From contig NC_043023.1 of the NCBI RefSeq assembly GCF_006345805.1, positions 5,518,001 to 5,582,000 of the forward strand: 64,000 nucleotides of DNA, in the 5' to 3' direction. Below the pieces are notes generated by a model. It was not told the DNA's origin. It was given only the letters and a program-made list of their open reading frames with translations, and ran no database searches. Each line of letters begins with the position of its first letter. Position 1 is the stretch's first letter. This DNA is from Octopus sinensis. Lineage: Eukaryota. Of the stretch, positions 4,795-45,557 are shown in pieces. Made by a program: the position numbers and the translations under genes.

Positions 4795-4937
4795 CTACAT
4801 TCTCCATAGGTTAATTGTGATGAGTGCAAAAAGGGTGAATCCAGCAAAGACGCCTATACAAAGGCTCTTTGCCACACGCTTGATATTGCTGTTACTTTCT
4901 GATGTCGCAACTTTAGAATCTTTTGTTGTTTCATTAT
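4795..4937 (-). CDS. Copy 1 stalk and transmembrane exon ending LWRM*
   Basis: DNETTKDSKVATSESNSNIKRVAKSLCIGVFAGFTLFALITINLWRM*; TAG where copy 2 has TCG. Confidence 0.75.
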
Positions 4938-5094
4938 CTGCAAAAAATGAACAGTAAAGCATATATTTTTTGCTTTTGATAAAAAAAAAATTGTAATATT
5001 TACCAGGATTTACTATTTTGCCACATACCGAAGTTTAGAAATAGCAGCCATAGAACCTTAGCTATTTCTTCTACTCTGGTATCGTTAGCTCGTC

Positions 5095-5560
5095 CATACA
5101 TTTGATTTTGCCTCTCTTCAAGACTAACACACCACATTTCCTCAGTCCGAACTCCATTCTGATATCAGCACTGAAGGTAAATACTGTATCAACAAGGGAA
5201 CTGACTTGGCTTCATAAAGTTTGAGGTCATCCATGAATAACAAATGGTTGACTTTTTGTTGGTGGCTTTCAAATACACACCCATCTTTTGCTTTCCTCAG
5301 AATCAGTGTTAGTGGTATCAAGCACAGTACAAAGATCAGTGGGGACAGACAGTCCATTTGGAAGATGCCCCTCCTGATATCTACTGTCTGTAAACTTCTT
5401 CCATATGCTATCAGGTTCGTCCTCCCATTTGCCATACTTTTTCCAAGCAATCGCTCAACATTTGATGCAACCCTTCTGCTCACATAGCAGGACTCCATTT
5501 TTTCTTTTCCAGATGTTTGTACATTGACTCTGCAAGTATTCCAGTCAATAATTTCCACAG

Positions 5561-5561
<1 letters not shown>
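5095..5561 (-). mobile_element. R4/Dong-clade LINE RT fragment next to (TAA)n (duplicate at about 32690-33146)
   Basis: LIAYGRSLQTVDIRRGIFQxDCLSPLIFVLCLIPL..NHLLFMDDLKLY..FSADIRMEFGLRKCGVLVLKRGK; abuts the TTA repeat at 5562-5606. Confidence 0.7.
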
Positions 5562-5607
<46 letters not shown>

Positions 5608-6008
5608 GGCGGTGAGCTGGTAGAATTGTTAGCACACTGGACAAGATGCATTTTGTCCATTGCTATGTTCCGAGTTCAAATTCTGCCGAGGTTAACTTTG
5701 CCTTTAATACTTTCAAGGTCAATAAAATAAGTACCAGTTGAACACTGGGGTCGATGTAATCAACTCATTCCTACCTCCCCTAAGCTGCTCTTGTGGAATA
5801 ATTTGAAATAAAAATACTAATTATAATCATTATTATTATGAACTTGAGGTTGTTTCCTGGCAGAATTGTTACTGCACCAGAAAATATATTCAATAGTACC
5901 AGCCAAATAGACTCAAATTGATGTAATCAAGGAACCTGAAACTGATGACCTTGTGCATGAATTAGAAAGAATTATTATTGTTATTATTAGCAGAAGTCAC
6001 TTCCTTAC

Positions 6009-6260
6009 CTTCTTTCCCAAGAGTAATAGTTGCATTACAGGAGTTCTTGTCATAGAATCTCCAAAACAAATCCCCTCTCGTTATATTCTCGATGTAGAGA
6101 GTAGAAGTTCTATGAATCTGCCTAACTACATATTTGCCACGATCGCAATATTTCTTATTGCACTCGATACTACGGACCCTATTTCTCCAGACCACAGGCC
6201 TTTCCATATAGGGCATATCTTTAACCTCAAGATCGATACTTTGTCCGAGCACAGGGTTTC
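6009..6260 (-). CDS. Copy 1 Ig-like domain 2 exon (252 nt, open)
   Basis: GNPVLGQSIDLEVKDMPYMERPVVWRNRVRSIECNKKYCDRGKYVVRQIHRTSTLYIENITRGDLFWRFYDKNSCNATITLGKE; AG/GT boundaries. Confidence 0.85.
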
Positions 6261-6575
6261 CTGCAATAAATATATGAATCATTATTATTGACTAGTTTCT
6301 CATATGAAAGATTTCAGGATTCATTTTTATCATCATCATTGTTTCAACACCTACTTTTACATATCTGGAATCAGAGTTTTCTTTATATAAAGATTTGAGA
6401 CACTTCCTCTCGTGATATCACAGGTGATTGTATAACAAAGAGCCAGGACATTAAATAATGACGGTCATGGTAGGTGAACTTCAAGTAAAATTGTATGAGT
6501 TAAGAGAAAAAAATAAAAAAACAGAACTGAAAAGATAGTGTCTAGTTTAAGATGAGAAAAAGGTACTCCACTTAC

Positions 6576-6617
6576 CTTTCAAAATACCTATTTTGTACTC
6601 TTTTTTACATTGCCAAC
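6576..6617 (-). CDS. Copy 1 42-nt micro-exon (WQCKKEYKIGILK)
   Basis: Identical to the copy 2 exon, AG/GT boundaries. Confidence 0.75.
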
Positions 6618-6885
6618 CTATTCAAATAGAAAACAAAAATATTTTCAGATTTTAAATTTTTGATTACTCTTTACTCTTTTACTTGTTTCAGTCATTTGAC
6701 TGCGGCCATGCTGGAGCACCGCCTTTATTCTTTGTAAGCCCAGTACTTATTCTATCGGTCTCTTTTGCCGAACCGCTAAGTAACGGGGACGTAAACACAC
6801 CAGCATCATGTGGTTGGTAAGCAAGCTACTTACCACACAGCCACTCCTGCGCCTATAACAAAGATTATTATTTTTTTTTACAAGA

Positions 6886-8215
6886 TCATCATCATCATTT
6901 AACATCTGCTTTTCATACAAGAATGGTTTGGAGGGATTGACCAGAGCTACCAAAGGGGGGAGCTGCACCAGGCCCCAATTGTCAGATTTAGCATGGTTTC
7001 TATAACTGGATGCCCTCCCTAACATAACCCCTTTACTGAGAGTGCTGGGTGCTTTCCTCTGGTGCCCAAACACATGGCATAGGCATGTGTGCTTTTTACA
7101 AGGTATCAGCACAGAACTCTTGCAGGCCAATCTTCTTCACCAGGGAGACTGCCATTAACACTTCTACTGTGGAGTATGAGGTCTTCTTAGGTCCATCGAT
7201 GGGCTAGGCATCTTGGTCTTACTGTCTGAAAGGTTCAGCATCCTGATGTAATCCTTCAGTACTTTGTTCCATGTCCTCCTGGCTATCCAACTTACATGTG
7301 TTCCACCTAATTTGAGAGATTGGCTCATCTTCATAGAGCTATCAGCATCCATCTGCATCACTTGCCCAAATCAGTGTTGTCTGCTTTCTTACACATTGCA
7401 TCTAATTCCTCTTATGCCTTACTTCTCTCTCAATACACTAGACTCTGTCAAACACGAACCCATACATTACACATCCAGCAGAGCATACTAGCCTCATACC
7501 TCTCTAACCTTCACATATCATCTGCATTAATGGACCACATCTCTTTACCATGTAGAATTGCTGTCCGTATACATGCATCATACAATCTTCCTTTCACTCA
7601 GAGAGAAAAACCAAGAGGTAACAGCTCCCTGAATTTCCTCAATCCTGTTCTTATTCTAGTTATTACACTCTCTCTGTATCCTCCCCCACAACTAATTTGG
7701 TCTCCTAGGTAGCAGAAATTATCCACTACCTCTAATGAGCCACTAGGGCATTTGAGAGAATCAATTTCCTGAGTCTCTCTAGTTTTTATGGATCTTTTAC
7801 ATCTTCCACATACAAACACTACTTTCAATGATTACCTGCCTATTATACCACTGCACTTCTTTTGCATCCATAGCAGACAGTGGGTACACCATATGGAGTT
7901 TCTGCCTACAAATTGGGCTGGGTCACCTACATGAAGAGTGTAGGGTCCTGTCTGTTTTCTTGCTTACTAAGCTCTTAGTCTTTGTTAAATTAACCTTAAG
8001 GTCCTTAGATTCTAGGCTTTGCATCCACATCTGGAATTTCTCTTCTAGCTCTGATATGGACTCTGCTACAGAGGCAAGATCATCAGCATATAATTTTTGT
8101 AGGGGTTGCTGGTCTTCAATTTCTCTGTTATGGCCTAGAGGACAATAACGAACCTTGATAAGCACCTACCTGTACACCAAATTCTTCACTGTACTCATGG
8201 TGAACTCATGTTGAC
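6886..8215 (-). mobile_element. 5'-truncated, decayed RTE-clade LINE (copy 1 intron only)
   Basis: LYADDL..LKVNLTKTK..VDNFCYLGDQISCGGG..RIRTGLRKFRELLPL; (GAT)n tail at 6886-6898. Confidence 0.8.
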
Positions 8216-9464
8216 AGAATTATCTGTTATATAAAATCCATTCTGTCTGTCTGTGTGTGTCTTCTTGGATCTCGGGCATCCTCCATCCGATTGCGCTCAA
8301 ATTTGATATGTAGATACCGACATAATCAGGGCTTCTATAAGTCTTGAAAATATTACAAAAATCGTTTCCAGGTGAGAATGCGATCGATAAAGCCATTTAT
8401 GTCCTGCTTTTCTTCCGTCAACCTGTACATAACTGCACCTTCAATTTTTTGTTGTTTTTGTACTGCTTAAAGGCACGTTTCTTTCCTGCCAAGCTTACTG
8501 TTTAAACCATGTTTGTGTTCTCCCAGTCAACAGCCTAATCATTACTGGTACTTTAAACTCTTCTGTTGCATATTTGTGTGAATAAAATCGCTTTTCTTTG
8601 GAATAGGAAAAAAAAGTCTATCTTTATTTCTTCTTTTGCTGGTGTCTCAAATTTAGGTTAAATCAGTGTTTCTCAAAGGGGAGGCCTATGGGACGGTCGG
8701 ACAAGTTGTTTTGAGAAAATTTGGTTTAAATGTTTGACAACTCAGCACCATCCATTGGACGGGGTGGGGGCGTTTTGCTTGTACATTATATAGTGACAGA
8801 AGGTATTGAAAATGTGATTATATGTTTGAACACTAAGACATCTGCTATTTTCATCATCATCATCATTCCAATACCCATTTAAATGGGTCATATAGAATAT
8901 GTTTAGGTGGACAATAACGAAAAGGGGTGGGCTGAGGACTGAGCCTTGTTGAGCACTTACCTGTACACCAGATTCTTAGTTATACCTGTGGGTAACTCAT
9001 GCAGACAGAGATATACATTAAATACAGTGACATAAGGCATTGAGGCTCTATGTTTAAACACCATTCTTTTACTTGTTTCAGTCATTTGACTGCGGCCATG
9101 CTGGAGCACCACCTTTAGTCGAACAAATCGACCCCAGGACTTATTCTTTGAAGCCTAGTACTTATTCTATCAGTCTCTTTTGCCGAACCGCTAAGTTACG
9201 AGGACATAAACACGCCAGCATCGGTTGCCAAGCGATGTTGTGGGGACAAACACAGACACACAAACACACACATACATATATACGACGGGATTCTTTCAGT
9301 TTCCATCCACCAAATCCATTCACAAGACTTTGGTCAGCCCAAAGCTATAGTAGAAGACACTTGCCCAAGGTGCCATGCAGTGGGACTGAACCTGGAACCA
9401 TGTGGTTTGTGCATGAATTAGAAAGAATTATTATTGTTATTATTAGCAGAAGTCATTTCCTTAC

Positions 9465-9713
9465 CTTCTTCCTTCAAAGAAACCCTTGCATAGCGATATT
9501 TCTTGTCGTGAAAGTCCAATCCACATCTGCCTGTGATATATTTTTTATCAAAATAGTGGATGTATTACCACTCTGCTGAACTTCTACTCTGCCAGATTTA
9601 TAACATGTTCTATCACATTGAAAGCTTTCATTCACATTTTTCCAGGTAACAGGTCGCTCCATGCTGGGTATTTCTTCAGTTTGAAGAGTCATTTCCTCCA
9701 AGTACAAAACTTC
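9465..9713 (-). pseudogene. Copy 1 Ig-like domain 1 exon, 249 nt, two frameshifting deletions
   Basis: GGAGGAAATGAC vs GGAGGAACCATGAC (-2) and TTTCACGAC vs TTTCCGCGAC (-1); the phase-1 reading gives GSFVLGGNDSSN*. Confidence 0.8.
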
Positions 9714-10057
9714 CTGAAATAAATATATATATATCAATATTACAGACTAGTTTCCCATATGAAAGATTTCAGGATTAACTTTTCATCATCATCATTCTCT
9801 CAACATCCATTTTTTCCATGCTTGGGATCAAAATTTTCTTTATATACAATTCAAAACTCTTCCTGACATAATATCTCTCTTTTACTCTTTACTCTTTTAC
9901 TTGTTTCAGTCATTTGACTGTGGCCATGCTGGAGCACCACCTTTAGTCATGCAAATCGACCCCAGGACTTATTCTTTGCCGAACCGCTAAGTTATGGGGA
10001 CGTAAACACACCAGCATCGGTTGTCAAGCGATGTTGGGGGGACAAACACAGACACAG

Positions 10058-10088
<31 letters not shown>

Positions 10089-10470
10089 CATATATACGAC
10101 AGGCTTCTTTCAGTTTCCGTCTACCAAATCCACTCACAAGGCTTTGGTCGGCCCAAGGCTGTACTAGAAGACACTTGCCCAAGGTGCCACGCAGTGGGAC
10201 TGAACCCGGAACCATGTGGTAGGTAAGCAAGCCACTTACCACACAGCCACTCCTGCGCCAGACTATTGTATCCCAGACTATTGTAGAACAAAGAGCCTGG
10301 AGATTAAATGATGATGGTTATGGTTGGATTTCAAATAAAATTGTTAAAAATTATGTTAATCAGGAAAATTTAAAAACAAAAACATGACTATAAACTGAGG
10401 GGAGAGAAAGAAATAAAAGAGAGAACTGAGAAGATAGTGTCCAGTTTAAAATGAGAAACAGGTTTCTTAC

Positions 10471-10509
10471 CTTTTTTAATGATTTTGTAGACTCTTTCAC
10501 ACTGCGAGC
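10471..10509 (-). CDS. Copy 1 39-nt micro-exon (SQCERVYKIIKK)
   Basis: AG/GT boundaries; one synonymous difference from copy 2. Confidence 0.75.
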
Positions 10510-11258
10510 CTAAAAGAGATGAAGACAAAAATATTTTCAAATTTTACATTTTTGAGTATTATTGTCGTCGTCATCGGCGTCATTTAATATCCGTTTTCCA
10601 TGCAGAAATGAGTTGGACAGTTTAACCAGAGTTGACAAGATGGAGAGCTGCACAAGGCTCCAGTGGGATTTAGCATGCTGGGTGCTTTTATTTGGCACCA
10701 CATGAGAGCCTGTTCATGGCACTGCCATGTGCTTTTTGTGTGGCAATGGCACAGAAATCTTGCAGGCCAATCTTCTTCAGCGGGGGAGTGACCTTAACAT
10801 ATCTGCTGTGGAGTACAGCTCTCTTGAGTACAGCAAGGCCCCAAGCATTTTGGTTGTTTGTCATCTTGTCTGAAAGGCAAGTGGGAGATGTAGGGTGTGG
10901 GACGTTGTCTCACAGTTGCTGACAGTAAACCTCATTTCTCCCTCTGACTAAGGTTCATGAAGTATTTATTTACCGTCACGTTACAATACCTTGCTTTGAC
11001 AGGCAGGTTATGATAAATCCAAAAGCATGCGAAGAAAAGTTTGTGTTCTCTTCATTGTTTAGTAGTAAATACAGAAAAAGATAGAATGATATTGTAAGAG
11101 AACAGAATTAGAGCTAGTGACAGTTGTAAGGTGTGGGATGTTGTCTCACAGTTGCTGACAGTAAACTTCATTTCTCCCTCTGACTAAGGTTCTAGCTGGT
11201 CAGCCAATACTGAAGGATTACCCACTAAAAAATAGAGCAAAAACAAATGAAAACTTAC

Positions 11259-11310
11259 CATAAAAAAATGTAAACAAGGCAAAGAAGAAGATGAATAGCT
11301 GACTGTCCAT
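11259..11310 (-). CDS. Copy 1 signal-peptide exon (MDSQLFIFFFALFTFFY-G)
   Basis: Same as copy 2 with one fewer TTC codon; donor G|GTAAGT. Confidence 0.8.
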
Positions 11311-11452
11311 AATCTGAAAAATAAATTTTAAAAAGAGTGAAAACTTGTTGTCTCAGTCCCATCAATGGGAGGAACTGATAATATTTTAGGTCTTATTTTA
11401 ACTCCTTTTATTTTCAGAATTTCAGTCCCAATGTCTTCTGATGTCACTTACT

Positions 11453-11520
11453 CTCTCCTCCATTTCCCAAAACACAAAATAACAAGAAACTATTCATGTC
11501 AGATGTCTACTTAACAATCA
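11453..11520 (-). other. Putative upstream (5' UTR) exon of copy 1; equivalent donor in copy 2 at 39946
   Basis: Donor AGA|GTAAGT at 11452 pairs with the acceptor tttttcag 3 nt before the ATG. Copy 1 alone has an in-frame upstream ATG (MEERI-MDSQ). The 5' boundary is unknown. Confidence 0.45.
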
Positions 11521-12110
11521 TGATGACATTGCTGTGGTATTTAACATTAGGTTATATATATAAAAGGCATCGTGTGTGTGTACGTGAATGTAATTTATGC
11601 ATGTCCACAAATTAGCAAGCATGTCGCTCTAATTTTAGGAGGACATTCGTCATGATCCTAGCTATATTTTCGTCAAATTATTTTACGTATATTTCTAAGT
11701 GTATCTCTACTGATTTCCTATAGAATTTCAGGTAAACAGTGAATCTTATGATGTTTCATATTCAAATATGTTTATGTAAATGATGTTATTAGAGACAGAA
11801 AAGATAGGTAATAGGTGTATGTACATATTTCGAGAGTTGTTGTCCTTTCATCAGCACCACATCCTACCCATCGACTATCCATGATGCCTAAAAGTGTTAC
11901 ACAGTGGGACTGAACCTGGAATCATGTGGTTGGGAAGCAAACTTGCTTGGTTTTAATAGTATTAAAATAGATTGTATTTGTATTTTATGGTCAGATCAAG
12001 GATCTCATCAAATGCTGATGAAACCTGCTGCTCGTATCATGTAAACAAGTGAAGAAAATATATAGTGCATGTGTTTATTTGGCAAAAAAAATTTAAATAA
12101 CCATCCTGAA

Positions 12111-12151
<41 letters not shown>

Positions 12152-12156
<5 letters not shown>

Positions 12157-12366
12157 GAAAAACCACTATTATGCAATTCAAACAATGATAGACATAAACC
12201 AAATCATAAATAAAAAATAAAATATAGTTTAAAACATAACTAGATCACATTCATTTTTGTACTTTTTGTGATCTAGTTATATGTTTTATAATATATTTTA
12301 TTTTTTATCTATGATTTGGTTTACGTCTATCATTGTTTGAAGTGCATAATAGTGGTTTTCCTCTAA
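12152..12366. repeat. Foldback/MITE with arms of about 100 bp and a 17-nt loop
   Basis: ttagagaaaaaaccactattatgca...ctagatcaca / tgtgatctag...tgcataatagtggttttcctctaa. Confidence 0.8.
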
Positions 12367-12453
12367 TTTATATATATTATATATTTATATTGTGAAATTT
12401 GATTTAATACCAAATTGAATTTTTCCTTGTAAGTTTGGAGTTTATACTAAGAT

Positions 12454-12485
<32 letters not shown>

Positions 12486-12574
12486 CCCAATAACTGATGA
12501 GCATGTCCATGTCTTATTTTTTTCCTTATGTTCCTTTCTCATCCTTCTGTGCATTTCTTACTCTTTCCTTCTCT

Positions 12575-14560
12575 CTCTTATCATTTAACATCTGTTCTCC
12601 ACGCTGGCATGGTTGGAATAGTTTGACAGAAGGTGACCAGCTGAAGAGCTGCCTGGGATCCATATTGTTTGTTTTGACATGGTTTTAGTGGCTGGATGCC
12701 CTTCCTAATGCCAACCATTTTACAGAGTATAATGTGTGCCTTTTGTGTGGCACCATCACCAGTGCTTTTCACAAGGTACCAGCAAGAATTTGAACGCTTT
12801 TCTTTTGTGGGACCATGGTTTTAGGATCTCAACTCTGTTGTGGTGGGGCAGCTCAGCTCAAGTATAGCAATGCACCAAATTTCTTCCTGTCATCTCTTTC
12901 ATCAGGTTCAATATTTAAAGATCGGTTTTAAAACATTGACACAAGTCTTCCTGGGTCTCCTTCTTCACACCAACACGCAGCAGATGCATCATATAATCTT
13001 CCTTTCACCCAACAGAGGGAACAGCTCTCGGAAACTTCTCCATCCTATTTTTATTCTAGCAATTACACTTTAAGTACAACCTCCTCCCCCCTACTAATCA
13101 GAACACCTAGGTAACAAAAACTATCTGCAACTTCTATAATCACAGGGACATTTAAGGAAATCAATTTCTCGTGTAGCTGTGGTCGTTATGTCTCCTGTAC
13201 ATCTTCACATACAAACACTAATTTCTCTGTTATCCTTCCAACTATTCCACTACACCTCTTGCCTGCTTATAGCTTGCACTGGGTACATTGAACGGAATTA
13301 CTGCCTACACCCTTCCTACATACTGAATAGGGACATTTAGCTGATGGGCGAAAGGTCCTGTTGGCTTTCTTGCTTATTACAACCTTGGTCTAAATTTACC
13401 TTAAGACCATCTAATTCCAGGTTCTGTTTCCACACCCAGAATTTCTTTTCTAATTCTGTTACATATTCTGCTATGAGGGCAAGGTCATTAGCATGTAGGA
13501 GTTCCTCTCGGCTTCCAGTCTTACATTGCTCTCTTATGGCCCAGAGGATGATGAAGAATAGTAGGGGGCTGGGAACCAACCCTTGGTGGACACCTACCTA
13601 TGCACTAAATTCATCAGTGTACACACGGCTAACTCTCACTTTACTAACAGTACCCCTTTACATGGCCTATACTACTTTCATGGGCCATTTGTCTATCTCT
13701 AGCTTCTTCAGGGACCACTCTATCTCACAGCAGGGATCTCTGTTGAAGGTTTTCTGCAGATCAACAAATGCCAAGTAAAACTGCTTGTTCTTAGCTAAAT
13801 ACTTCTTTTGACTATGAAAATAGCATCTGCAGTATTTCTATCTGGGACAAAATCAAATTGCATTTCAGCCAGCCTAATTCCGCTCCTAATTAATTGTGCT
13901 AAAATTCTCTCTACAACTTTCATCCCCTGTTCCAGCATCTAGATACCTCTATAATTACTTCTAAGGCATCTCACTTGCTCTTGTAGCACCTGACTTCATT
14001 GTCATTAGGGATTACATCTTGAATCACCCAATTCACTACATTGGCGAGACTGTATCCAACTACCAGATATCTTAAGCATTTCGACAGTGACTCCTGATGG
14101 GTCAGGGGCCATTCCTATTTTCATATCTTTAATTGCTTTATCTATCATGCTGGTGTCAACCAGGACAGCTGGTCCCTTTGTAGGGTTCACATAAGGAAGA
14201 TTCCCTTCCTCCCGTTCATTCTCCACATCTAATAGTCCCTTATAGTAGCTCTTCCAAATTTCTTTTTCTCCAGAATCACTAATAGCAAACATACCATTAT
14301 CTGTCCATACACACTTCTCTTCCACATGTTGATTCTCTAACACAAATGTCTGGCAACCCAGAACACCTCAAGTCTCTCATCTTCATATTGTAAACTCCTT
14401 CCTTTCTGCTTCTGCTCTGGCAAGATATACCTGACGTTTAGCTCCTCTTTTAGTTGTCTGATATGGTTGTTTGCTCCCCCAATTCTTCCTGTCATTCCAG
14501 GCTTGTCTTGTCTCTTCCATAGTCATGACTAGCTTGTTCCATCACCAGGACTCTCTTGGG
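12575..14560 (-). mobile_element. Decayed RTE-clade LINE fragment
   Basis: AIKDMKIGMAPDPSGVTVEMLK, PSPLLFFIIL..ELLHANDLALIAE..LKVNL; many stops and frameshifts. Confidence 0.75.
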
Positions 14561-15932: not shown

Positions 15933-15949
15933 TGTTACTATTATTTATG

Positions 15950-21903: not shown

Positions 21904-22605
21904 ATGAAAGTAGATGCAGCGATGGGTGCACCTGTAGCGGTATCTGATATCCTCACTCGAACACACAGACACAAACACGTGTTGCATGCACACATACACA
22001 ACACTTGCTAACACTCACAACTCTCTAACTTGTAAATAAAATCTTATCTTATCTCAAACAGTGGAACGGCTTGTCAACGTGCATTTATATTCTGTTGGCA
22101 CTACTTTGTATAAATAGTACCTATGGCTTATCTTATTTCGTTACGGATGCGATTGCGTGACTTACCTATGTCACCAACCTTTTCACATGCGGTCGTTTTT
22201 TAAAGACATAAAATGCGGTCGTTTTTTAAAAACATAACATGCGGTCGTTTTTCCTACACGCCTTTTGTCACTTTCCAGACTTGTCATAGCATGCCCGAAG
22301 TAGTATAATCTTTATATGTCGATGAGAGACGTCAACATGTGCCAATTTTTTCACACAATATCAAAACTTTATTTCGATTATTAATAAATCCATAAATATT
22401 AAGTTCTGTTTAGCTTTGATTACTTTAGGAGTCTAATCAAAGCAAGAAAAAAAAAACTATTGTGTAAATTTATTATATGAAATAATGCTTTATATTTGTA
22501 GTTAGAAAGTTCCTATTTTTAGCAGAAATATTTTTCTGCATTGAAAAACTGAATTATTAAATAATTCTCAACATCGAGGGGTAGGACAAGGCACAGGCAG
22601 TTTAA

Positions 22606-23681: not shown

Positions 23682-24383
23682 TTTAATACTAAAAATCTAG
23701 TAGAGATGATATCAAATTTAGGTTTAGACTACACCTAAAAATATATTTAACGATTTTATTTATTCCTTTCAGTATTTAATCCATTTTTTTTTATTGCGAA
23801 ATTTCATTTTTCCTACCTTATTGCATGATTTTTAATTTGAAAAGAGATTCTTATTTTCGGTTTTAACCTTGAAACAAACTCTTTTATGGATTTTAACTTT
23901 TTGACAAAAAATTGCTTTATTTATAACCCATTACCATTCATCTTTTACCTCCTTCAGTTTCTTTTGACCAAATCCACTGACAAGTCTTTTGTCAGCCGAA
24001 GGATGAACTAGAAAACACTTTGCCCAAGGTACTGCTGCAGTGGGACTGAACCCAGGACCATGTGGTTGGGAAGCAAACTTCTTCCCCCACAGCCACGCCT
24101 GTGGCTATCTAACCTGATGTGTTTCCAGGAAGGAGAAAATACAATATTCATATTTAATATTTTTGGCAAATAGCTGGGAGTTGTATTCTAGTAAAGCACT
24201 GATGCATTCACTGTTTTTAGGTTAGAAATAAGCATTACTGAAAATAGAACCACATGGTCTAAGGTTCAGTCCCACCATGTGGCACCTTGGGTAAATGTCA
24301 TCTACTATAGCATGGGTTGACCAAAACCTTGTGAAGGGATTTGGTAGGCAGAAACTGATAGAAACCTGTTGGATACACACACA

Positions 24384-25555
24384 GGACCTTTTCCTTTTGA
24401 ACGGTAGTTTTCAACACGATTTCTAGTTAACTAGACACTTTTAAACTTCGTATACTGGTAGAATGTGTCAAAATAAAACATGTTTTGGATCTTTTCCTTT
24501 TGAACGGCATACAATTTCTAGTTTTCTAGACACTTTTAAACTTCGTATACTGGTAGAATGTGTCAAAATAAAACATGTTTTGGATCTTTTCCTTTTGAAC
24601 GGCATACAATTTCTAGTTTTCTAGACACTTTTAAACTTCGTATACTGGTAGAATGTGTCAAAATAAAACATGTTTTGGATCTTTTCCTTTTGAACGGCAT
24701 ACAATTTCTAGTTTTCTAGACACTTTTAAACTTCGTATACTGGTAGAATGTGTCAAAATAAAACATGTTTTGGATCTTTTCCTTTTGAACGGCATACAAT
24801 TTCTAGTTTTCTAGACACTTTTAAACTTCGTATACTGGTAGAATGTGTTAAAATAAAACAATTTTTTCTCTTGGCTTTCTTGAAAAAATTGTAATTTGTA
24901 AGTTTAACGAAGTTTAATTTTTCGAATTTTAACTAATCCTACGGCCTCTAGTGAGCTACAATCATTTGCTGCACGTCTAAAACAGACAACATCCTGTCAC
25001 TAACCCTCACCCCAAATTTTAGCCTTTCGGTTTATTTTTTCTTGATTGTTAAATTAATTTAAGGATAACAATTAAGAAAAAAAAACGAAAGCAATGGAAA
25101 ATAATTTTAATTTAACAATTAAGAAAAAAAAACGAAAGCAAAAACTCAAAACAAAAACAAAACGAATAATTTTAGACACACGCGTAACAATTAAATTAAT
25201 TTAACAATTAAGAAAAAAAAACGAAAGGCTAAAATTTAGGGTTTGGGTTAGGGGTGGTGAGAAGGGTATCTTTTTTCTTCACAAATGTAAATAAACCCAA
25301 TCTGTTTCTTAAACGAGGGACATATTCATACGGCACAGACTGTTTTCACCTCAATAGACGTCATTGATTGGTTAAAATTGCAGAAATCGAAGAAGAAAAA
25401 AAAACAATAAATATCTTACAAACTATAGAATTCCCTCAATAAAGCCAAGAGAAAGAGATGTTTTATAAACACATTCTACCAGTATACGAAGTTTAAAAGT
25501 GTTTAGTTACGTGGAAATTATTTTTAAAAACTACCAGTCAAACCGAAAAGATCCC
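24384..25555. mobile_element. GGATCTTTTC-terminated MITE whose left arm is expanded to five tandem units of about 95 bp
   Basis: Units start at 24384, 24487, 24582, 24677, 24772; reverse-complement right arm at about 25430-25555. Confidence 0.8.
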
Positions 25556-25600
25556 ACTTCAGATGGCATGGATGCCGATTACATCGGAATTTATTATATA

Positions 25601-25986
25601 CTAGCAGTATTGCCCGGCGTTGCTCGGGTTTGTAAGGGAAATAACTATATAAGCATTTTTAGAGAGTTGTAGTCAAAAAATAGCAAAAAAATGCATTAAA
25701 ATTGGAAAAAAATGATGGTAATTTTTTTTTTAAATCGTTGACTCATCGTAGACATTTTTAGAGAGTTACCTCCCTTATATAATAGCGAAAAAATGCATTA
25801 AAATTGGAAAAATTGATGGTAAATTATTTTTTAAATCGTAGACACGCACTAATACCCAGAAGGGCTCGATATGAATCACGACTATAAGATACCCAGTTTT
25901 AGTTAAACTGCACCGCAAAATGTGGGTGTAGTTAGGAATCTAAATCGTAGGAGACAGACACACAACCTTACTTTTATATATAAAGA
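25601..25986 (-). mobile_element. Complete short Helitron, same family (3'-truncated plus-strand copies start at 1584 and 28800)
   Basis: Reverse complement shows a TC start, subterminal hairpin and CTAG end. Confidence 0.85.
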
Positions 25987-27292
25987 TAAGGTTTCCAAGA
26001 TTGGTAGAAGGGAGGGAAAGTGTCTCTCAAACTGAAGACTTGGTCTTGGTAAAAAAACTTCTCTGAAAATACAAGAAAAATAAAAAGGCTATAAGGAGTC
26101 GTATGGGATGCCTAAACCAAAATTTTGCCTTTTCTTTATAGATTCTTGAAAGGATGAAAGACAAAGTTGACCTTCGCAGGATTTGAACTCGGCATACTGA
26201 GGGAACAAATCCTGCATGACATTTTATTGGATCGAGATAATTTACCTCATTGTTTATCATTAAGGTAGGCCATGGAGGGATTTGAATTTGGAACATTAAA
26301 AAGCAGAACTAAATAATCTTTTCTACTTTGGTTACGAGGCCTGAAATTTTCAGGAAGGGGGCAGATCAATTATATGGACCCTATTGCTTAACTCAGTGGT
26401 TCTCAACCAGGGTCCATATAAGGTGTTGTTAAAATTTATCTGCAATAAATTGCTTGGCTCAGTGGTTAGAGTGTCAGGCTTGCAATCATGAGGTAGTGAT
26501 TTCGATTCTTGGACTGGGCTGTGTTGAGCAAGACACTTTATTTCACATTGCTCCAGTTCACTCGGCTGTAGAAATTAGATGCAACTTCTCTGGCGCCAAG
26601 CTGTATTGACCTTTGCCTTTCCTTTGGATAACATTAGTGGCATGTAGAAGGGAGGCTTGTATGTATGTTTGTTCCTTCTCGAGCCATGCCTGGCTCATAA
26701 GGGCCGGTTACCCGGTCTCTTGGCATATAGGTTCCCCACCTGGACAGGACACCGGTCTGTCGCAGGTGAGCTGCAAGATGCAGGAGAAAAGAGTGAGAGG
26801 AAGTTGTGGCATAAGAGTCAGCAGAATTTCGCCATTACCTTCTGCCGGAGCCTCGTGGAGCTTACGTGTTTCGATCATAAACACACACATCGCCTGGTCT
26901 GTGATTTTAACCCGCGATCCCTCGACCACGAGTTTGCTGCTCTACACACTAGACCATGTGCCTCCACCTAGTATGTATGAGCAACTGCTGGTCTTCCATA
27001 ACCAACCTTGCACAGACTTGTGCCTCAGAAAGGAACTTTCTAGGTGCCACCCCATGATCATACATGATTGAAGGAGGTCTTTACTCTTTACTTCTACAAT
27101 GCACAAAATATTAAAATTTTTTTTAAAATGCACAGGTGCGGCTGTGTGGTAAGAAGCTTGCTCCCTAACCACATGGTTCCAGGTTCAGTCCCATTGCATG
27201 GAATCTTGGGCAAATGTCTTCCACTATAGCTTCAGGCCAACCAAAGCCTTGTAGACAGAAACTGAAAGAAGCACATCATGTATATATATATC

Positions 27293-27680
27293 GCAGGAGT
27301 GGCTGTGTGGTAAGTAGCTTGTTTACCAACCACATGGTTCCGGGTTCAGTCCCACTGCGTGGCACCTTGGACAAGTGTCTTCTACTATAGCATCAGGCCA
27401 ACCAAAGCCTTGTGAGTGGATTTGGTAGACAGAAACTGAAAGAAGCCTGTCGTATATGTGTATATATATGTATGTGGGTGTATGTGTTTGTCCCTCTAGC
27501 ATTGCTTGACAACCGATGCTGGTGTGTTTACGTCCCCGTTACTTAGCGGTTCGGCAAAAGAGACCAATAAAATAAGTACTGGGCTTACAAAAGAATAAGT
27601 CCCGGGGTCGATTTGCTCGACTAAAGGCGGTGTTCCAGCATGGCCTCAGTCAAATGACTGAAACAAGTAAAAGAGTAAAG
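27293..27680 (+). mobile_element. Full-length copy of the dominant tRNA-derived octopus SINE
   Basis: ggagtggctgtgtggtaag (A box)..gggttcagtccc (B box)..ggcaccttggacaagtgtc..tail agtaaaagag. Other copies, often partial: 150-470(+), 2641-2810(+), 6668-6853(-), 9068-9410(-), 9880-10258(-), 19935-20225(+), 34240-34460(-), 36060-36400(-), 52555-52710(-), 61685-62135(-), 63150-63527(-). Subfamily name (OR/OK) not assigned. Confidence 0.85.
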
Positions 27681-30177
27681 AGTATATATATATATAGCAG
27701 CAACAACAACAGCTATAATAGGCAGGACACCAATTCCACGCATCCAAAGAAATACATTGGGTGCATGGGAACTTCCTTTAAGAAACATCTCTCCACCATA
27801 GATCCTCCTTCGGAGGGTCATTTATTCACATTATTTTTCAATTTGTCACCCATTTTAATAACAAATCCTGCATGACATTTTATTGGATCCAGATAATTTA
27901 CCTCATTGTTTATCATTAAGGTAGGCCATGGTGTGATTTGAACTTGGAACATTAAAAAGAACTGCTGACTCTTATGCCACAACTTGCTCTCTCTCTTTCC
28001 TCCTGCATCTTGCAGCTCACCCGCGACGGACTGGTGTCCCGTCCAGGTGGGGAACCTATACGCCAAGAGACCGGGAAACCGGCCCTTATGAGCCAGGCAT
28101 GGCTCGAGAAGGAACAAACATACATACAAGCCTCCCTTCTACATGCCACTAATGTTATCCAAAGGAAAGGCAAAGGTCAATACAGCTTGGCGCCAGAGAA
28201 GTTGCATCTAATTTCTACAGCCGAGTGAACTGGAGCAATGTGAAATAAAGTGTCTTGCTCAACACAGCCCAGTCCAAGAATCGAAATCACTACCTCATGA
28301 TTGCAAGCCTGACACTCTAACCACTGAGCAGAGCAATTTATTGCAGATAAATTTTAACAACACCTTATATGGACCCTGGTTGAGAACCACTGAGTTAAGC
28401 AATAGGGTCCATATAATTGATCTGCCCCCTTCCTGAAAATTTCAGGCCTCGTAACCAAAGTAGAAAAGATTATTTAGTTCTGCTTTTTAATGTTCCAAAT
28501 TCAAATCCCTCCATGGCCTACCTTAATGATAAACAATGAGGTAAATTATCTCGATCCAATAAAATGTCATGCAGGATTTGTTCCCTCAGTACGCCGAGTT
28601 CAAATCCTGCGAAGGTCAACTTTGTCTTTCATCCTTTCAAGAATCTATAAAGAAAAGGCAAAATTTTGGTTTAGGCATCCCATAAAACTCCTTATAGCCT
28701 TTTTATTTTTCTTGTATTTTCAGAGAAGTTTTTTTACCAAGACCAAGTCTTCAGTTTGAGAGACACTTTCCCTCCCTTCTACCAATCTTGGAAACCTTAT
28801 CTTTATATATAAAAGTGAAGTTGTGTGTCTGTCTCCTATGATTTAGATTCCTAACTACACCCACATTTTGCGGTGCAGTTTAACTAAAACTGGGTATCTT
28901 ATAGTCGTGATTCATATCGAGCCCTTCTGGGTATTAGTGCGTGTCTACGACTTTAAAAATAATTTACCATCAATTTTTCCCATTTTAATGCATTTTTTCG
29001 CTATTATATAAGGGAAGTAACTCTCTAAAAATGTCTACGACGAGTCAACGATATTTTAAAAAATTTTCTTTTTGCATAACTGTATGAATTCTTGTATGTA
29101 GAACACGAATTCATAAAAATTTTCTGAAAAAAGTTAGAGGTTATATGGAGCTTAAACCAAAAATCTGCCTTTTTTTTGTGTTGACCCTCACCCAAAGAAT
29201 GAATGGTAAAGTTGACCTTGGCTGGATTTGAACACAAAGTATAGTGATTTGGAACAAATACCGACCAGGGATCTCATCCAATGCTCATCTCTAGTCATGG
29301 CCAAACTGCAGCCCATGGGTCCTTCTGAATAGCACCCCTAATAAAAAATTACGTTCAATATATTAAATGTGGAGGCACAATGGCCCAGTTGTTAGGGCAG
29401 CGGACTCGCGGTCTGAGGATTGCGGTTTCGATTTCCAGACCGGGCGTTGTGTGTGTTTATTGAGCGAAAACACCTAAAAGTTCCACAAGACTCCGGCAGG
29501 GGGGGGTGATTCCTGCTGTACTCTTTCACCACTCTTTCTTCTGTTGGCCTGCTCGCTTAGCCAGCTGGGTGGCGTCATTCGAAGGCTAAAGCAATGTGAA
29601 CGCATTGTTACCAGCGATGTGTAACAACATCTGATGGTCTAATCGGTCACGTGCTTATGAAAAAAATCCTTGCCAACCATGACTAGCCTCACATTTTGAG
29701 GGAGGTGTTGGGGGGGTGGTCTTTTCTGTTTCACTTTCACTTTTCAATTCCAATGGTTTTGTTCTAGTTGATTTCAAATTGGTCTATTGATGTAATTTTG
29801 TATGCTAGTCATGGAAATGAAATCTATTTCTGCCTTAAATTAATAAATATAGGTGTAGGCATGGCTGTGTGGTAAGAAGCTTGCTTCCCAAACACATGGT
29901 TCCAGGTTCAGTTCCATTGTGTAGCACCTTGGGAAAGTGTCTCTACTATAGCCTCGGGCCAACTAAAGTCTTGTGAGTGGATTTGGTAGATGTAAACTGA
30001 AAGAATCCAGCTTGTATGTATGTATACACCACCTGTCTTCGTCTTTTGTTTTTTTCGTAAACTCTCCCTATATATATAAAAACGGTAAGATAATAAAAGA
30101 AAGAAAGAGACCTCGATATTATGTAAATAGAGGAATTTATCTGTAAATGTAATATGTGACAATTATTCGGTAGTCAA

Positions 30178-30238
30178 GATAAAACTCCAAGTTTCGGATG
30201 CCGAGGTGGAAATCCATGCCACTATCTCTTAAGTTATC
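30178..30238 (-). ncRNA. Hammerhead motif in copy 2 with core mutation CUUAAGA (G5 to U), predicted inactive
   Basis: Plus strand tctcttaagttatcc vs tctcttcagttatcc in copy 1 (position 30231). Confidence 0.55.
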
Positions 30239-30604
30239 CGGCCATCGGGAAAATGCTATGAAAAATGACCGTTACACAAAGGGAAATTACTGTCTTATTA
30301 ACCGCTATTAAGACAAAAGCACTATTCAAATGACTGCTAAATAAGGTTTGGGGATAAAAAGTTCATAGTATTCGCGTAAGCACACCCGTTTAGACCTACA
30401 CATGTGCGCCCACACACCCATGTCTGTATGCATACATTTATCCACCCTCACTAGAAAAACGTACACATCTTCACTTACATCCTTCATCAAATGTATATGC
30501 ATATAGGTACAAACCCACACACACATGTGGTCATTCGAATAGCACTTTTGTCTTAATAGCGGTCAATAACACAGTCATTTTTCATAGCGTTTTTTCGATG
30601 GCCG

Positions 30605-30665
30605 GATAACTGAAGAGATGGTGGCATGGATTTCCACCTCGGCATCTGAAACCTGGAGTTTTATC
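30605..30665 (+). ncRNA. Hammerhead motif, inverted arm of copy 2, core intact
   Basis: GATAA CTGAAGA ... CATCT GAAA C CTGGA G TT TTATC. Confidence 0.6.
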
Positions 30666-30911
30666 TTGGCTACCAAATAATTGTCACATATTACATTTAC
30701 AGATATGTGGCTTTCTGCTGAAGAGGCAACACCAGTCGTAAATAAATTTATTTTATTTACAAAAGATTGCCAAAACTATGCATAGTCCAGAAAGGAGAGT
30801 GTAAACGTTTTTATTTCTCTTTCCATTTCAGAATTACAACTATTAGTGGTTTGGAGTTTAACTGCTCTTTCTAGTGAGTCGGATGTCCTATTATGGCCAT
30901 CCCTTATATGT

Positions 30912-30965
<54 letters not shown>

Positions 30966-32382
30966 AAATGTGTTGTTGAAAAGGCACATAAATTCAAAAA
31001 CACGTAATTGTTTAAAATACATTTATTTTCAACGATTAGAATTATTTACTTTAATAAAATAAAATAATTTATTTCGAAAGGTTAACCCTTTAGCGTTCGA
31101 ATTAATATGTCATAAGTAATCCTTATTCATTTACATTTTAAAAAATTAATCTGGTATTATCTTGTAGCTTCAAGATTTGAAAGATGTAATTGTTTATTTT
31201 TAGAATGACATGAAAGTGGTAGGGTTGTGGGATGTTGTCTCACAGTTGCTGACATTAAATTTAATTTCTCTTCCTGACCATTGTCTTTAGTAGCTGCCAT
31301 GATTGGGATCATGGTTCTAGCGTTCCGCTCCCTAACTCATGGTAGCTGTCTCTGACTTGGTTGAGTTGTCACGAGCCAACTGACTAACTGTCTTTTTGCT
31401 TGAGGTTCTTGCTTTTATAACTATCCAGGATAGACCTATCGTTGAGAACAACGTGCTTTGTTGGTGGTACTGTGATATCTCTATTCTAGCTTTTGGTGAA
31501 GTAGAAGAGGTTAGAAAGGGTCAAGTGGTGAAGACATTATTTTGGCCTAGCTAAAGGCATCTGGAAAATGTAAAACTGCTGTCAGAGAGAAACCATTGTT
31601 CCATCATCATCATCACCATCATATAACGTCCGTTTTCCATGCTAGCATGGGTTGGACAGTTCAACCAGGGTCCAGGAAGCCAGGAGGCTGCACCAGGCTC
31701 CAGTCTGATCTGGCAGTGTTTCTACAGCTGGATGCCCTTCCTAACAACAACCACTCCGTGAGTGTAGTGGGTGTTTTTATGTGCCACTGGCACAGGGCCA
31801 AATGAGGCCGGCAACGGCCACAATTGGTTGGTGTTTTTTACGTGCCACCAGTACAGAAGCCAGTCAAGGATGACTGTGGTACTGCTACGCCAGCCATTGG
31901 GTATGACTCCATCATGAGCTACCTGGTTTACAATTTGGGTGACCAGACAATAGCCCACGCCACAAGATGTTTTAAGCATCTCAGCAGTGAATCCTGATGG
32001 CCTCATCTGATTTTTGATTTGTTAAAATACTAAATACTGGTGACTTTTTTTCGGTGGTCAAGCTTGTCGTTCTGCTTGATTGGCTTCCCTGTGGAAGTTA
32101 AGCTAGTTTGACCTATGTAGTCCCCACCACACCCTCCACATTTGAGAAAATAGATTAAGTTCTTCAAAGCACATTATGGTAAAAATTTGACTCAATTTAA
32201 ATTTGTATGTTGAGCCCTCAAAGGGTAAGATGCAAGTTCCACAGTTGGGGCCGTTGTACTTTTTGACTTGTAATTTTTTTTCAAGTTCTTGGAGTCGCTT
32301 TTCTCAGGTTTTAGGGATTTGATGCCATCGTGCAAATTATGGGGCACAAAAGAAAAAGCACCAACCAATCCTTTCTTGCATG

Positions 32383-32540
32383 CTATACCAATTTTTTCGA
32401 GATTTTCCATAGGCTAATTATGATGAGAGCAAAAAGCATGACTCCAGCAAAGAAGAATATGCAAAGGCTTATTGCTATACGCTCGCCATTGCTGAGTCCT
32501 TCTGATGTAGCAACTTTAAAATCTTTTGTTCTTTCATTAT
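32383..32540 (-). CDS. Copy 2 stalk, transmembrane and tail exon ending KISKKLV*
   Basis: ttttttgcag| acceptor in phase 1; hydrophobic run IAISLCIFFFAGVMLFALIIISLW followed by basic residues and a stop. Confidence 0.85.
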
Positions 32541-33146: not shown

Positions 33147-33179
<33 letters not shown>

Positions 33180-45425: not shown

Positions 45426-45478
<53 letters not shown>

Positions 45479-45557
45479 GAGACAGACAGACAGATAGATA
45501 GAGAGACAGACAGACAGATAGATAGAGAGACAGATAGATAGATAGATAGATAGATAA

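What the first reader, a model, noticed from the sequence alone, without database searches (positions are those of the whole stretch)
4795..32540. Transmembrane exon is the most diverged part of the duplication
27 nucleotide differences in about 143 comparable nt (16 amino-acid changes, one new stop, three synonymous codons), whereas the 190 nt just past the stop differ at about 3 sites. Copy 1 gains polar or charged residues in the helix (VAKSLCIGVFAGFTLFALITINLW) where copy 2 is uniformly hydrophobic (IAISLCIFFFAGVMLFALIIISLW). Established: vertebrate paired Ig receptors use a charged TM residue and a short tail to recruit signalling adaptors. Inference: the paralogues differ in membrane partner, or this exon was imported by gene conversion from a more distant family member.
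Basis: partly seen in the sequence, partly recalled or inferred. Interest (0 to 1): 0.75.

Follow-up and report, generated by a model that had tools for sequence, protein, structure and literature searches.

The report
Odd membrane-anchor exon, octopus receptor duplicate
Two neighbouring copies of an uncharacterised, octopus-only immunoglobulin-like surface-receptor gene are nearly identical except in the exon for the membrane anchor, mostly because one copy picked up a dense 82-base patch of changes in one species, most likely pasted in by gene conversion rather than marking a vertebrate-style activating/inhibitory receptor pair.

Summary
The window is Octopus sinensis chromosome CM016885.1. 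It holds two tandem copies (S1 downstream, S2 upstream, minus strand) of a six-exon gene for a type I membrane protein with two Ig-like domains. The stalk/TM exons (4937-4795 and 32540-32383) differ at 27 of 143 sites. Non-coding background is 1.5%, and the next 190 nt differ at 3 sites.

The four-copy orthologous array in O. vulgaris and an O. bimaculoides outgroup let me polarise the 27 differences:
- 17 are unique to S1, derived, and packed into 82 nt (4916-4835).
- 8 are older variants shared with O. vulgaris copies V3/V4.
- 2 are unique to S2.

The "new stop" is not new: V1 and V2 have it too. Synonymous and nonsynonymous sites are equally elevated (ratio about 1.2-1.35), so the cause is not codon-wise positive selection, and uniform neutral decay cannot give an 85-fold local excess.

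My best reading is a short non-allelic gene-conversion patch from an unsampled donor, in an array that demonstrably exchanges cassettes and evolves with dN above dS. No donor was found.

The paired-receptor reading is not supported. This is not a vertebrate, neither tail has a signalling motif, and the lysine sits at the helix edge. S1 also has a frameshifted Ig1 exon, and the NCBI gene model is an S2/S1 hybrid.

The parts
4795..4937 (-). S1 (copy 1) stalk + transmembrane exon, including stop TAG at 4797-4795. Encodes (D)NETTKDSKVATSESNSNIKRVAKSLCIGVFAGFTLFALITINLWRM*
   Evidence: It is the last exon of NCBI model LOC115225395 (P0001).
4835..4916 (-). S1-specific patch: 17 substitutions found in no other copy (15 where all five others agree). 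It changes F..RY..GERIAIS..IFFF..VI to S..SN..IKRVAKS..IGVF..FT. Two further S1-unique intron changes lie at 4973 and 4967.
   Evidence: 15/82 here against 4/1864 elsewhere, P about 1e-24.
32383..32540 (-). S2 (copy 2) stalk + transmembrane exon. Encodes (D)NERTKDFKVATSEGLSNGERIAISLCIFFFAGVMLFALIIISLWKISKKLV*. It is not annotated.
   Evidence: It differs from O. vulgaris V1 at only 4/143 sites.
6009..6260 (-). S1 Ig-like domain 2 exon (phase 1/1)
33579..33830 (-). S2 Ig-like domain 2 exon. It differs from S1 by 13 nonsynonymous and 0 synonymous changes, which lie in cassettes shared mosaically with the O. vulgaris copies.
6576..6617 (-). S1 mini-exon 4 (WQCKKEYKIGILK, A-strand of Ig2). Identical to the S2 mini-exon at 34146-34187.
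34146..34187 (-). S2 mini-exon 4
9465..9713 (-). S1 Ig-like domain 1 exon. It is disrupted by a 2-bp deletion (about 9693/9692) and a 1-bp deletion (about 9511) relative to S2 and V1-V4, giving a TGA after 8 codons.
38537..38788 (-). S2 Ig-like domain 1 exon (intact). This is the Ig1 exon used in the NCBI model.
10471..10509 (-). S1 mini-exon 2 (SQCERVYKIIKK)
38957..38995 (-). S2 mini-exon 2
11259..11310 (-). S1 signal-peptide exon (ATG at 11310-11308), with an in-frame 3-bp deletion relative to S2
39751..39805 (-). S2 signal-peptide exon (ATG at 39805-39803), the start of the NCBI model

Best explanation
The window holds a two-copy tandem array in Octopus sinensis. The copies belong to an octopus-restricted, uncharacterised gene for a type I membrane protein: signal peptide, two divergent Ig-like domains (each split into a mini-exon plus a 252-nt exon), a stalk/TM exon, and a 2-7 residue tail.

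The extreme S1-S2 divergence in the stalk/TM exon has two layers. About 8 differences are old variation between two copy lineages that predate the O. sinensis/O. vulgaris split: type A (S2, V1, V2) and type B (S1, V3, V4). 17 differences form a single dense, in-register, 82-nt patch (4916-4835) that arose only in S1 after that split.

I infer that one short non-allelic gene-conversion (templated repair) event wrote this patch from a diverged homologous exon that lies neither in the window nor in the orthologous array. This happened in an array whose copies otherwise keep their non-coding DNA about 98% alike, exchange cassettes, and show an excess of amino-acid replacements in all three large exons.

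Shown: the coordinates, counts, polarity, clustering, equal elevation of silent and replacement sites, cassette mosaicism, Ig-like fold, and orthology. Inferred: that the patch was copied from a donor. Not shown: any functional consequence. The patch keeps a usable 21-residue hydrophobic anchor and turns the juxtamembrane 'GERIAIS' into 'IKRVAKS'.
For: Identity of the locus and gene structure. Top-ranked divergence window and P about 1e-21. Four O. vulgaris copies, with synteny showing S2~V1 and S1~V4.

Polarisation: 17 S1-unique, 8 shared, 2 S2-unique. At the 17 sites the O. bimaculoides outgroup agrees with the other five copies at 11, with S1 at 3, and with neither at 3.

S1-unique rate: 15/82 in the tract against 4/1864 elsewhere. 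The 3' flank differs by only 5-10 of 372 nt between any two of the six copies.

Silent sites are also elevated. For the whole exon dS = 0.185 and dN = 0.219. For the S1 lineage within the tract there are 3 synonymous changes in 18.8 sites and 14 nonsynonymous in 65.2, and the synonymous excess over background has P = 0.003. Two more S1-unique changes lie in the adjacent intron.

Conversion is active in the array: the Ig2 cassettes S.Y/x.E and DRGKYV/ENDTYA occur in all four combinations, and shared variants in the flanks are reticulate. The patch contains no indel, and other apparent clusters in the array are breakpoint artefacts.
Against: No donor was found. There is no third TM-type exon in the window. 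No k-mer of 14 nt or longer from the tract occurs elsewhere in the window, the L001 tail or the O. vulgaris array. No annotated family member has a stalk/TM segment more than 32% identical. The protein-database search for a donor was uninformative, because it failed even to retrieve P0001.

The rest of the O. sinensis genome could not be searched. The silent-site excess rests on only 2-3 synonymous and 2 intronic changes. S1 has a frameshifted Ig1 exon, so relaxed constraint could contribute, although it cannot explain the clustering. A clustered mutational event or a mis-polished assembly patch would look similar.
Confidence: 0.45

Rival explanations
1. Adaptive burst: strong positive selection on the stalk and membrane-anchor residues of S1 fixed many point substitutions one by one after the species split. 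This could reflect a changed membrane partner, with the charge reversal E to K plus I to K at the outer helix boundary.
For: The whole array shows more replacement than silent change. Nonsynonymous change is 0.11-0.15 per site, against 0.04-0.07 for synonymous sites and 0.045 for flanks, in Ig1, Ig2 and the TM exon even without S1. 14 of the 17 patch changes alter amino acids, the ORF stays open, and the segment remains hydrophobic. The exon is also fast-evolving relative to its adjacent intron when compared with O. bimaculoides.
Against: Silent sites in the patch are elevated about tenfold as well (3 of about 19, P = 0.003), and two adjacent intron sites are S1-unique. The implied dN relative to the neutral rate would be above 15 over a very short time. 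S1 carries a disrupted Ig1 exon. The changes stop abruptly within the exon, not at its ends.
Confidence: 0.2
2. Clustered mutation without a template: a single error-prone repair or synthesis event (multi-nucleotide mutation cluster) hit this 82-140 nt stretch in the S1 lineage. S1 is a decaying copy, so the damage was tolerated.
For: No donor was detectable. dN/dS is about 1 in the patch. S1 has a frameshifted Ig1 exon. The patch has sharp bounds and no indels.
Against: The 19 changes are a roughly even mix of transitions and transversions with no strand-coordinated signature (read). A density of 20% over 82 nt is very high for known repair-associated clusters (established knowledge, not tested here). 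The reading frame and hydrophobic character survived.
Confidence: 0.15
3. Assembly artefact: the patch is a consensus or polishing error, or it derives from a collapsed additional copy in the long-read assembly, so the true S1 exon is V4-like.
For: The region is a near-identical tandem duplication where read mis-mapping is likely. S1 also shows small indels in Ig1 that could be long-read errors. Exact ORFs of both exons are absent from independent assemblies in the protein collection.
Against: Errors in long-read assemblies are mostly indels, whereas the patch is 17 substitutions with none. Mis-polishing would import variants of existing copies, but these states occur in none of five other copies. 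There are no Ns or gaps in the window. The NCBI pipeline built its model through this exon.
Confidence: 0.1
4. Paired activating/inhibitory receptor pair: S1 gained a charged TM residue and a short tail to recruit a signalling adaptor, while S2 is the non-charged partner.
For: S1 has Lys residues at the N-terminal edge of the helix and a 2-residue tail. The ectodomains are Ig-like.
Against: There is no ITIM or long tail in S2 or in any of the six copies. The 2-residue tail with TAG is shared by V1 and V2, which have no Lys. The Lys lies outside the 21-residue uncharged run. The organism is a cephalopod, and no such adaptors are described there in the held literature. S1 has a broken Ig1 exon.
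Confidence: 0.05

Closest known systems
Vertebrate paired Ig-like receptor families (KIR, LILR/PIR, SIRP, CD300, TREM)
   Same: Tandemly duplicated type I membrane proteins with Ig-like ectodomains. Copies differ most in the TM/tail region. Gene conversion and diversifying selection act among the copies.
   Different: There is no inhibitory member with an ITIM tail. The basic residue sits at the helix edge. Short tails are common to all copies. The organism is an octopus, and no DAP12/FcR-gamma-type adaptor is known there. There is no detectable sequence relationship beyond the Ig fold.
Basigin (CD147) / embigin / neuroplastin
   Same: Two Ig-like domains, a single TM helix, and a short tail. 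Structures of this group are among the best structural matches to the modelled domain (7y1b, 7dce, 7xy8, 9l0c). More distant members of the octopus family carry a Glu in or near the helix, as basigin does.
   Different: Only 17-19% identity over the structural alignment. No sequence-level homology was detected. The six copies studied here have 'ER' before the helix rather than a mid-helix Glu. No evidence of a transporter partner.
Exon-versus-intron pattern of MHC class I/II genes (diverse exons in homogenised introns) and other conversion-shuffled immune multigene families such as mollusc FREPs
   Same: Non-coding DNA is kept about 98% alike across copies and species, while specific exon segments are 2-3 times more variable, mostly nonsynonymous, and are shuffled as cassettes.
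   Different: Here the most extreme segment encodes the stalk/TM anchor, not a ligand-binding surface. Its main component is one lineage-specific patch rather than long-maintained alleles. No immune function has been shown.

Membership tests
Immunoglobulin superfamily (Ig-like ectodomain) | Ig-type beta-sandwich fold of about 100 residues | tested here: met
   AlphaFold2 on a 17-sequence domain alignment gave mean pLDDT 87.4, pTM 0.82 and 9 strands. All top Foldseek PDB hits are Ig V/I-type domains at probability 1.00 and TM 0.5-0.59.
Immunoglobulin superfamily (Ig-like ectodomain) | Significant match to Ig profile HMMs | tested here: inconclusive
   The window's own domains do not match (best is I-set, E = 0.05). 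4 of 17 family domains match I-set (best E = 5.6e-5) and 2 match Ig_3. The best PDB profile hit is CD2 at E = 0.059.
Immunoglobulin superfamily (Ig-like ectodomain) | Canonical B-F strand disulfide (Cys...Trp...Cys) | tested here: not met
   The Trp is conserved, but in the six copies studied the B- and F-strand positions are Leu and Phe/Trp. Cysteines occur instead in an ECxxxC motif and in the mini-exon. More distant members have WKC...CLTW.
Paired activating/inhibitory Ig-like receptors | Inhibitory member with a long cytoplasmic tail carrying an ITIM | tested here: not met
   Tails are RM, RI, KISKKLV, RMKKNLV and RMKKKLV. There is no [SIVL]xYxx[IVL] motif outside the helix.
Paired activating/inhibitory Ig-like receptors | Activating member with a basic residue inside the TM helix plus a short tail | tested here: inconclusive
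   S1 has K at the position directly before its 21-residue uncharged run, and KR three residues earlier. The tail is 2 residues, but V1 and V2 have the same tail without the Lys.
Paired activating/inhibitory Ig-like receptors | Presence of an acidic-TM ITAM adaptor (DAP12, FcR-gamma, CD3-zeta type) in the same genome | not testable with these tools
   No tool searches the octopus genome. A literature search found no cephalopod paper that mentions these adaptors.
Non-allelic gene-conversion tract | Sharply bounded cluster of differences within otherwise near-identical paralogues, affecting silent and replacement sites alike | tested here: met
   17 S1-unique sites lie in 82 nt, against 1 in 372 nt of 3' flank. 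pS = 0.16 and pN = 0.215.
Non-allelic gene-conversion tract | An identifiable donor carrying the same states | tested here: not met
   None was found in the window, the L001 tail, the O. vulgaris array, O. bimaculoides or the annotated family proteins. The rest of the O. sinensis genome was not searchable, and one search was uninformative.
Non-allelic gene-conversion tract | Independent evidence that the array undergoes conversion or recombination | tested here: met
   Four-gamete violation between multi-nucleotide cassettes in the Ig2 exon, and reticulate sharing of flank variants.

The most novel reading that the evidence does not exclude
The tandem copies may not be independent genes. They could be parts of one complex transcription unit in which phase-1-compatible exons of neighbouring copies are combined. 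The O. sinensis model joins S2 Ig1 to S1 Ig2+TM. The O. vulgaris model leaves the V3 TM exon at an internal GT donor and enters exon 2 of V4. On this reading, alternative 3' cassettes would give one octopus-specific Ig-like receptor different membrane anchors, and the S1 patch (E to K and I to K at the outer helix boundary) would switch its membrane partner. That would be a cephalopod-invented, combinatorially diversified surface-receptor system.
Probability: 0.1. Interest if true: 0.7.

Novelty: new member of a known kind. Interest (0 to 1): 0.35.

Why it matters
The locus shows that an octopus-only family of Ig-like membrane proteins, entirely uncharacterised in the databases, evolves as tandem arrays with three features: copy-number change between sister species (2 versus 4), cassette exchange, and an excess of amino-acid replacements. 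That is the evolutionary style of recognition or immune-type receptors, about which very little is known in cephalopods.

The specific anomaly is a dense derived patch in the membrane-anchor exon of one copy. It is a clean natural case for asking whether short ectopic conversion can rewrite a TM segment. It also has a practical consequence: it flags mis-annotation. The reference model is a hybrid of two copies, an intact copy is left unannotated, and one copy has a broken Ig1 exon.

The locus gives no evidence for a vertebrate-like activating/inhibitory receptor system in an invertebrate, which would have been the exciting reading.

Tried and rejected
1. Pfam on individual exon translations gave nothing significant. 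The fold only became clear after building a family domain alignment.
2. Single-sequence AlphaFold2 of the NCBI protein gave pLDDT 42 and was unusable.
3. tblastn and blastn-short searches for a third TM-type exon in the window found none.
4. A k-mer search for a local template of the S1 tract found none of 14 nt or longer.
5. Comparing both TM peptides with 41 family proteins gave a best hit of 32% identity or less.
6. The last homologous-protein search, with the S1 TM ORF, returned 'no candidate'. It missed P0001, which contains the query, so I treat it as uninformative and not as a negative.
7. Exact look-ups of nine ORF and spliced variants in 15 billion proteins found none. This leaves no independent confirmation of either exon and no transcript-derived evidence.
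8. The idea that S1 keeps an ancient variant that escaped homogenisation is rejected. The O. bimaculoides outgroup carries the non-S1 state at 11 of the 17 sites and the S1 state at 3.
9. Apparent patches of unique sites in V1 (near exon 1) and V3 (near exon 4) are misalignments at deletion or duplication breakpoints.
10. My first frame settings for Ig1 and mini-exon 2 were wrong, and those two lines should be ignored. Correct translations are and correct counts.
11. A possible splice donor TTG|GTATAG after the S2 TM helix, leading to further cytoplasmic exons, has no supporting evidence. Both public models stop at the TAG.
Full report
**What is at the coordinates.** Both quoted peptides are encoded on the minus strand, at 4875-4804 and 32478-32407. 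A self-comparison shows that the window is repeat-rich eukaryotic DNA with a tandem segmental duplication of about 27.6 kb. Block 156-3972 matches 27380-31211, block 4219-6828 matches 31822-34421, and further blocks run up to about 12039/41492. The exon in question follows a TTTTTTGCAG acceptor and starts at 4937 in copy 1 (called S1 here) and 32540 in copy 2 (S2), in phase 1.

**Check of the observation.** Between 4928 and 4796 there are exactly 27 substitutions and no indel. The next 190 nt have two substitutions and one 1-bp indel. Across 9,538 aligned positions of the duplication the mean substitution divergence is 2.0%. The TM exon is the top 143-nt window with 27 differences. The runners-up are the Ig2 exon with 12 and the intron just upstream of the TM exon with 11. 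With a non-coding background of 129/8592 = 1.5%, the probability of 27 or more in 143 is about 1e-21.

**What the gene is.**
- A spliced translation of S2 retrieves a single protein, Octopus sinensis LOC115225395, annotated 'uncharacterized'.
- The genomic locus of that protein is 100% identical to the window over 49,805 nt. The window is therefore O. sinensis chromosome CM016885.1, and the model spans window 39805 to 4795 on the minus strand.
- Each copy has six exons, all with phase-1 junctions: signal peptide, a 39-nt mini-exon, a 252-nt domain exon, a 42-nt mini-exon, a second 252-nt domain exon, and the stalk/TM exon.
- The NCBI model is a hybrid. It takes the signal peptide, mini-exon and domain 1 from S2, and domain 2 and the TM exon from S1. 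The intact S2 domain-2 and TM exons are left unannotated.
- S1's own domain-1 exon carries a 2-bp and a 1-bp deletion relative to S2, which gives a TGA after eight codons. All four O. vulgaris copies are intact at this exon.

**The family and the fold.** An exhaustive HMMER search finds 26 clusters of relatives. All those looked up come from O. sinensis, O. vulgaris or O. bimaculoides, all are 'uncharacterized', and several lie on the same chromosome. They share a roughly 95-residue repeat followed by a stalk, one TM helix and a short tail. The window's own domains do not reach Pfam thresholds. However, 4 of 17 family domains hit I-set, with a best E of 5.6e-5. An AlphaFold2 model built on the domain alignment is confident (pLDDT 87.4, pTM 0.82), and its best PDB matches are exclusively Ig V/I-type domains, including basigin and embigin. 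The protein is thus a divergent two-Ig type I membrane protein. In these copies it lacks the canonical B-F disulfide.

**Codon statistics for S1 versus S2.**
- In the TM exon dN = 0.219 and dS = 0.185, a ratio of 1.18. But dS is itself about 12 times the non-coding background (5 synonymous differences in about 30 sites, P about 8e-5), so uniform neutral decay is not the explanation.
- The Ig2 exon behaves differently, with 13 nonsynonymous and 0 synonymous differences.

**Outgroups.** A family-profile search returned an O. vulgaris protein 85% identical to the model. Its 97.6-kb locus carries four complete tandem copies, V1-V4. Synteny shows two things. The DNA upstream of S2 matches that upstream of V1. 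The DNA downstream of S1 matches that downstream of V4, and a chromo-domain gene follows the array in both species. S2 is therefore the positional counterpart of V1, and S1 of V4. An indel near exon 4 and shared exon variants define two old lineages: type A (S2, V1, V2) and type B (S1, V3, V4). The O. bimaculoides locus supplies a deeper outgroup exon.

**Polarising the 27 differences**:
- 17 are unique to S1. At 15 of them all five other copies agree. All 17 lie between 4916 and 4835.
- 8 are variants that S1 shares with O. vulgaris copies, mostly V3 and V4.
- 2 are unique to S2.

Pairwise exon differences are 4 for S2-V1, 2 for V1-V2, 9 for V3-V4, 12-16 for type A versus type B, and 22-27 for S1 versus everything else. 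In 372 nt of 3' flank, any two of the six copies differ by only 5-10 sites. S1-unique changes occur at 4/1864 elsewhere and at 15/82 in the tract, an 85-fold excess with P about 1e-24. At the 17 sites, O. bimaculoides has the state of the other five copies at 11, the S1 state at 3, and neither at 3. The S1 states are therefore derived, not an old retained variant. The stop codon is not new either. TAG occurs at the same codon in V1 and V2, V3 and V4 have AAG, and S2 has TCG.

**Mechanism.** On the S1 lineage, the tract holds 3 synonymous changes in 18.8 sites and 14 nonsynonymous changes in 65.2 sites, a ratio of 1.35. The synonymous excess over background has P = 0.003. Two more S1-unique changes lie in the adjacent intron, at 4973 and 4967. 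The tract has no indels and sharp limits inside the exon. Other apparent clusters in the array are breakpoint misalignments. The array demonstrably exchanges sequence: the Ig2 cassettes S.Y/x.E and DRGKYV/ENDTYA occur in all four combinations among the six copies.

Across the array, replacement changes per site (0.11-0.15) exceed synonymous changes (0.04-0.07) and flank changes (0.045) in Ig1, Ig2 and the TM exon (Fisher P = 0.003 for Ig2 replacement sites versus introns).

Taken together, the simplest account of the S1 patch is a single short non-allelic conversion from a diverged homologue. I could not find the donor:
- It is not in the window.
- It is not in the orthologous array or anywhere else in the sequence I hold.
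- It is not among annotated family proteins, whose stalk/TM segments are 32% identical or less.
- The database search for it was uninformative.

For that reason I put the conversion reading at 0.45. The rivals are an adaptive burst (0.2), an untemplated mutation cluster (0.15) and an assembly artefact (0.1).

**The paired-receptor idea.** S1 keeps a 21-residue uncharged run (SLCIGVFAGFTLFALITINLW), and the Lys sits immediately before it. The other copies have a 24-residue run preceded by 'ER'. V4 has an Arg deeper in the helix, and all tails are 2 or 7 residues with no ITIM or ITAM. Charged residues at or in the helix are common in more distant family members. No paper in the held library links cephalopods with DAP12/ITAM adaptors. 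The defining features of paired activating/inhibitory receptors are therefore either not met or not testable, and I rate this reading at 0.05. What does remain is a real charge reversal at the outer boundary of the anchor, from GERIAIS to IKRVAKS. Its consequence is unknown.

**Comparison with what is known, and novelty.** The pattern combines near-identical non-coding DNA, diversified exon segments, cassette shuffling and copy-number change between sister species. This is the familiar behaviour of conversion-prone multigene families of surface receptors. The family itself is octopus-restricted and undescribed in the databases. The anomaly sits in the membrane-anchor exon rather than in a binding surface, which is unusual but does not make it a new kind of system.

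**Verdict.** This is a new member of a known kind, and I score interest at 0.35.

Noticed in passing
window 39805-4795 (-), with unannotated exons at 33579-33830 and 32383-32540: The NCBI model LOC115225395 is a hybrid of the two copies (S2 signal peptide + Ig1, S1 Ig2 + TM). It leaves the intact S2 Ig2 and TM exons inside a 28-kb 'intron'. S2 alone would encode a complete 265-aa protein, and that protein is absent from the protein collection.
   Followed up: partly
window 9465-9713 (-); deletions at about 9693/9692 and about 9511: S1's Ig1 exon has a 2-bp and a 1-bp deletion relative to S2 and all four O. vulgaris copies, producing an early TGA. Because all exons are phase 1, skipping this exon would keep the frame. 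This could be real decay or long-read indel errors.
   Followed up: partly
L002 about 60432/60433 (V3 TM exon); equivalent site at window 4884-4879 and 32487-32482: The O. vulgaris model P0044 leaves the V3 TM exon at an internal donor (AATG|GTGAGC, phase 1) and enters exon 2 of V4, giving a four-Ig run-on protein. The site reads GGTGAG in V3/V4, GGCGAG in S2/V1/V2, and ATCAAG in S1, where the patch destroyed it.
   Followed up: no
window 33576-33530 and 38534-38500 (-), and the same positions in S1: The introns after both Ig exons begin with a conserved stretch that reads through as GKE[V/I/M]TSANNNNNNSF-stop. The same ending appears in database 'proteins' from O. bimaculoides and from Logan contigs (P0003, P0006, P0008). 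These look like retained-intron or unspliced models, or possibly a secreted isoform.
   Followed up: no
window 6009-6260 and 33579-33830 (-); L002 16267, 36311, 56920, 79743: Ig2 exon variants behave as cassettes (S.Y versus D/F/Y.E, and DRGKYV versus ENDTYA) and are present in all four combinations across the six copies. S1 versus S2 shows 13 replacement and 0 silent differences here.
   Followed up: yes
L002 10154-87562 versus window 4795-39805: Array size differs between the sister species: four copies in O. vulgaris and two in O. sinensis. Two old copy lineages exist, type A (S2, V1, V2) and type B (S1, V3, V4), also marked by a 26-bp indel upstream of exon 4. V3 and V4 carry 2-6 kb insertions in the Ig2-TM intron about 83 nt upstream of the TM exon.
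   Followed up: partly
L003 34603-34800 (O. bimaculoides): The O. bimaculoides homologue's TM exon continues into a tail of at least 21 residues (YKSKGIQGNLTKRIVSFFHKK...). This tail is homologous to what is now 3' non-coding DNA in O. sinensis and O. vulgaris, so the tail was truncated to 2-7 residues in their common ancestor. No Ig2 exon was seen in that locus, which contains 10.3 kb of Ns.
   Followed up: no
window 46389-48280 (-), 45300-46000 and 48270-49320: A GC-rich (53%) retroelement ORF with a reverse-transcriptase-like YADD motif is flanked by long tetranucleotide arrays that translate as YLSIYLSI... Many SINE-like repeats of about 300 bp are scattered through the window.
   Followed up: no
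tool behaviour: the search for homologous proteins with the 55-aa S1 TM ORF reported that no candidate shares three words with the query, although P0001 contains 47 identical residues. Negatives from that tool for short queries should not be trusted.
   Followed up: no
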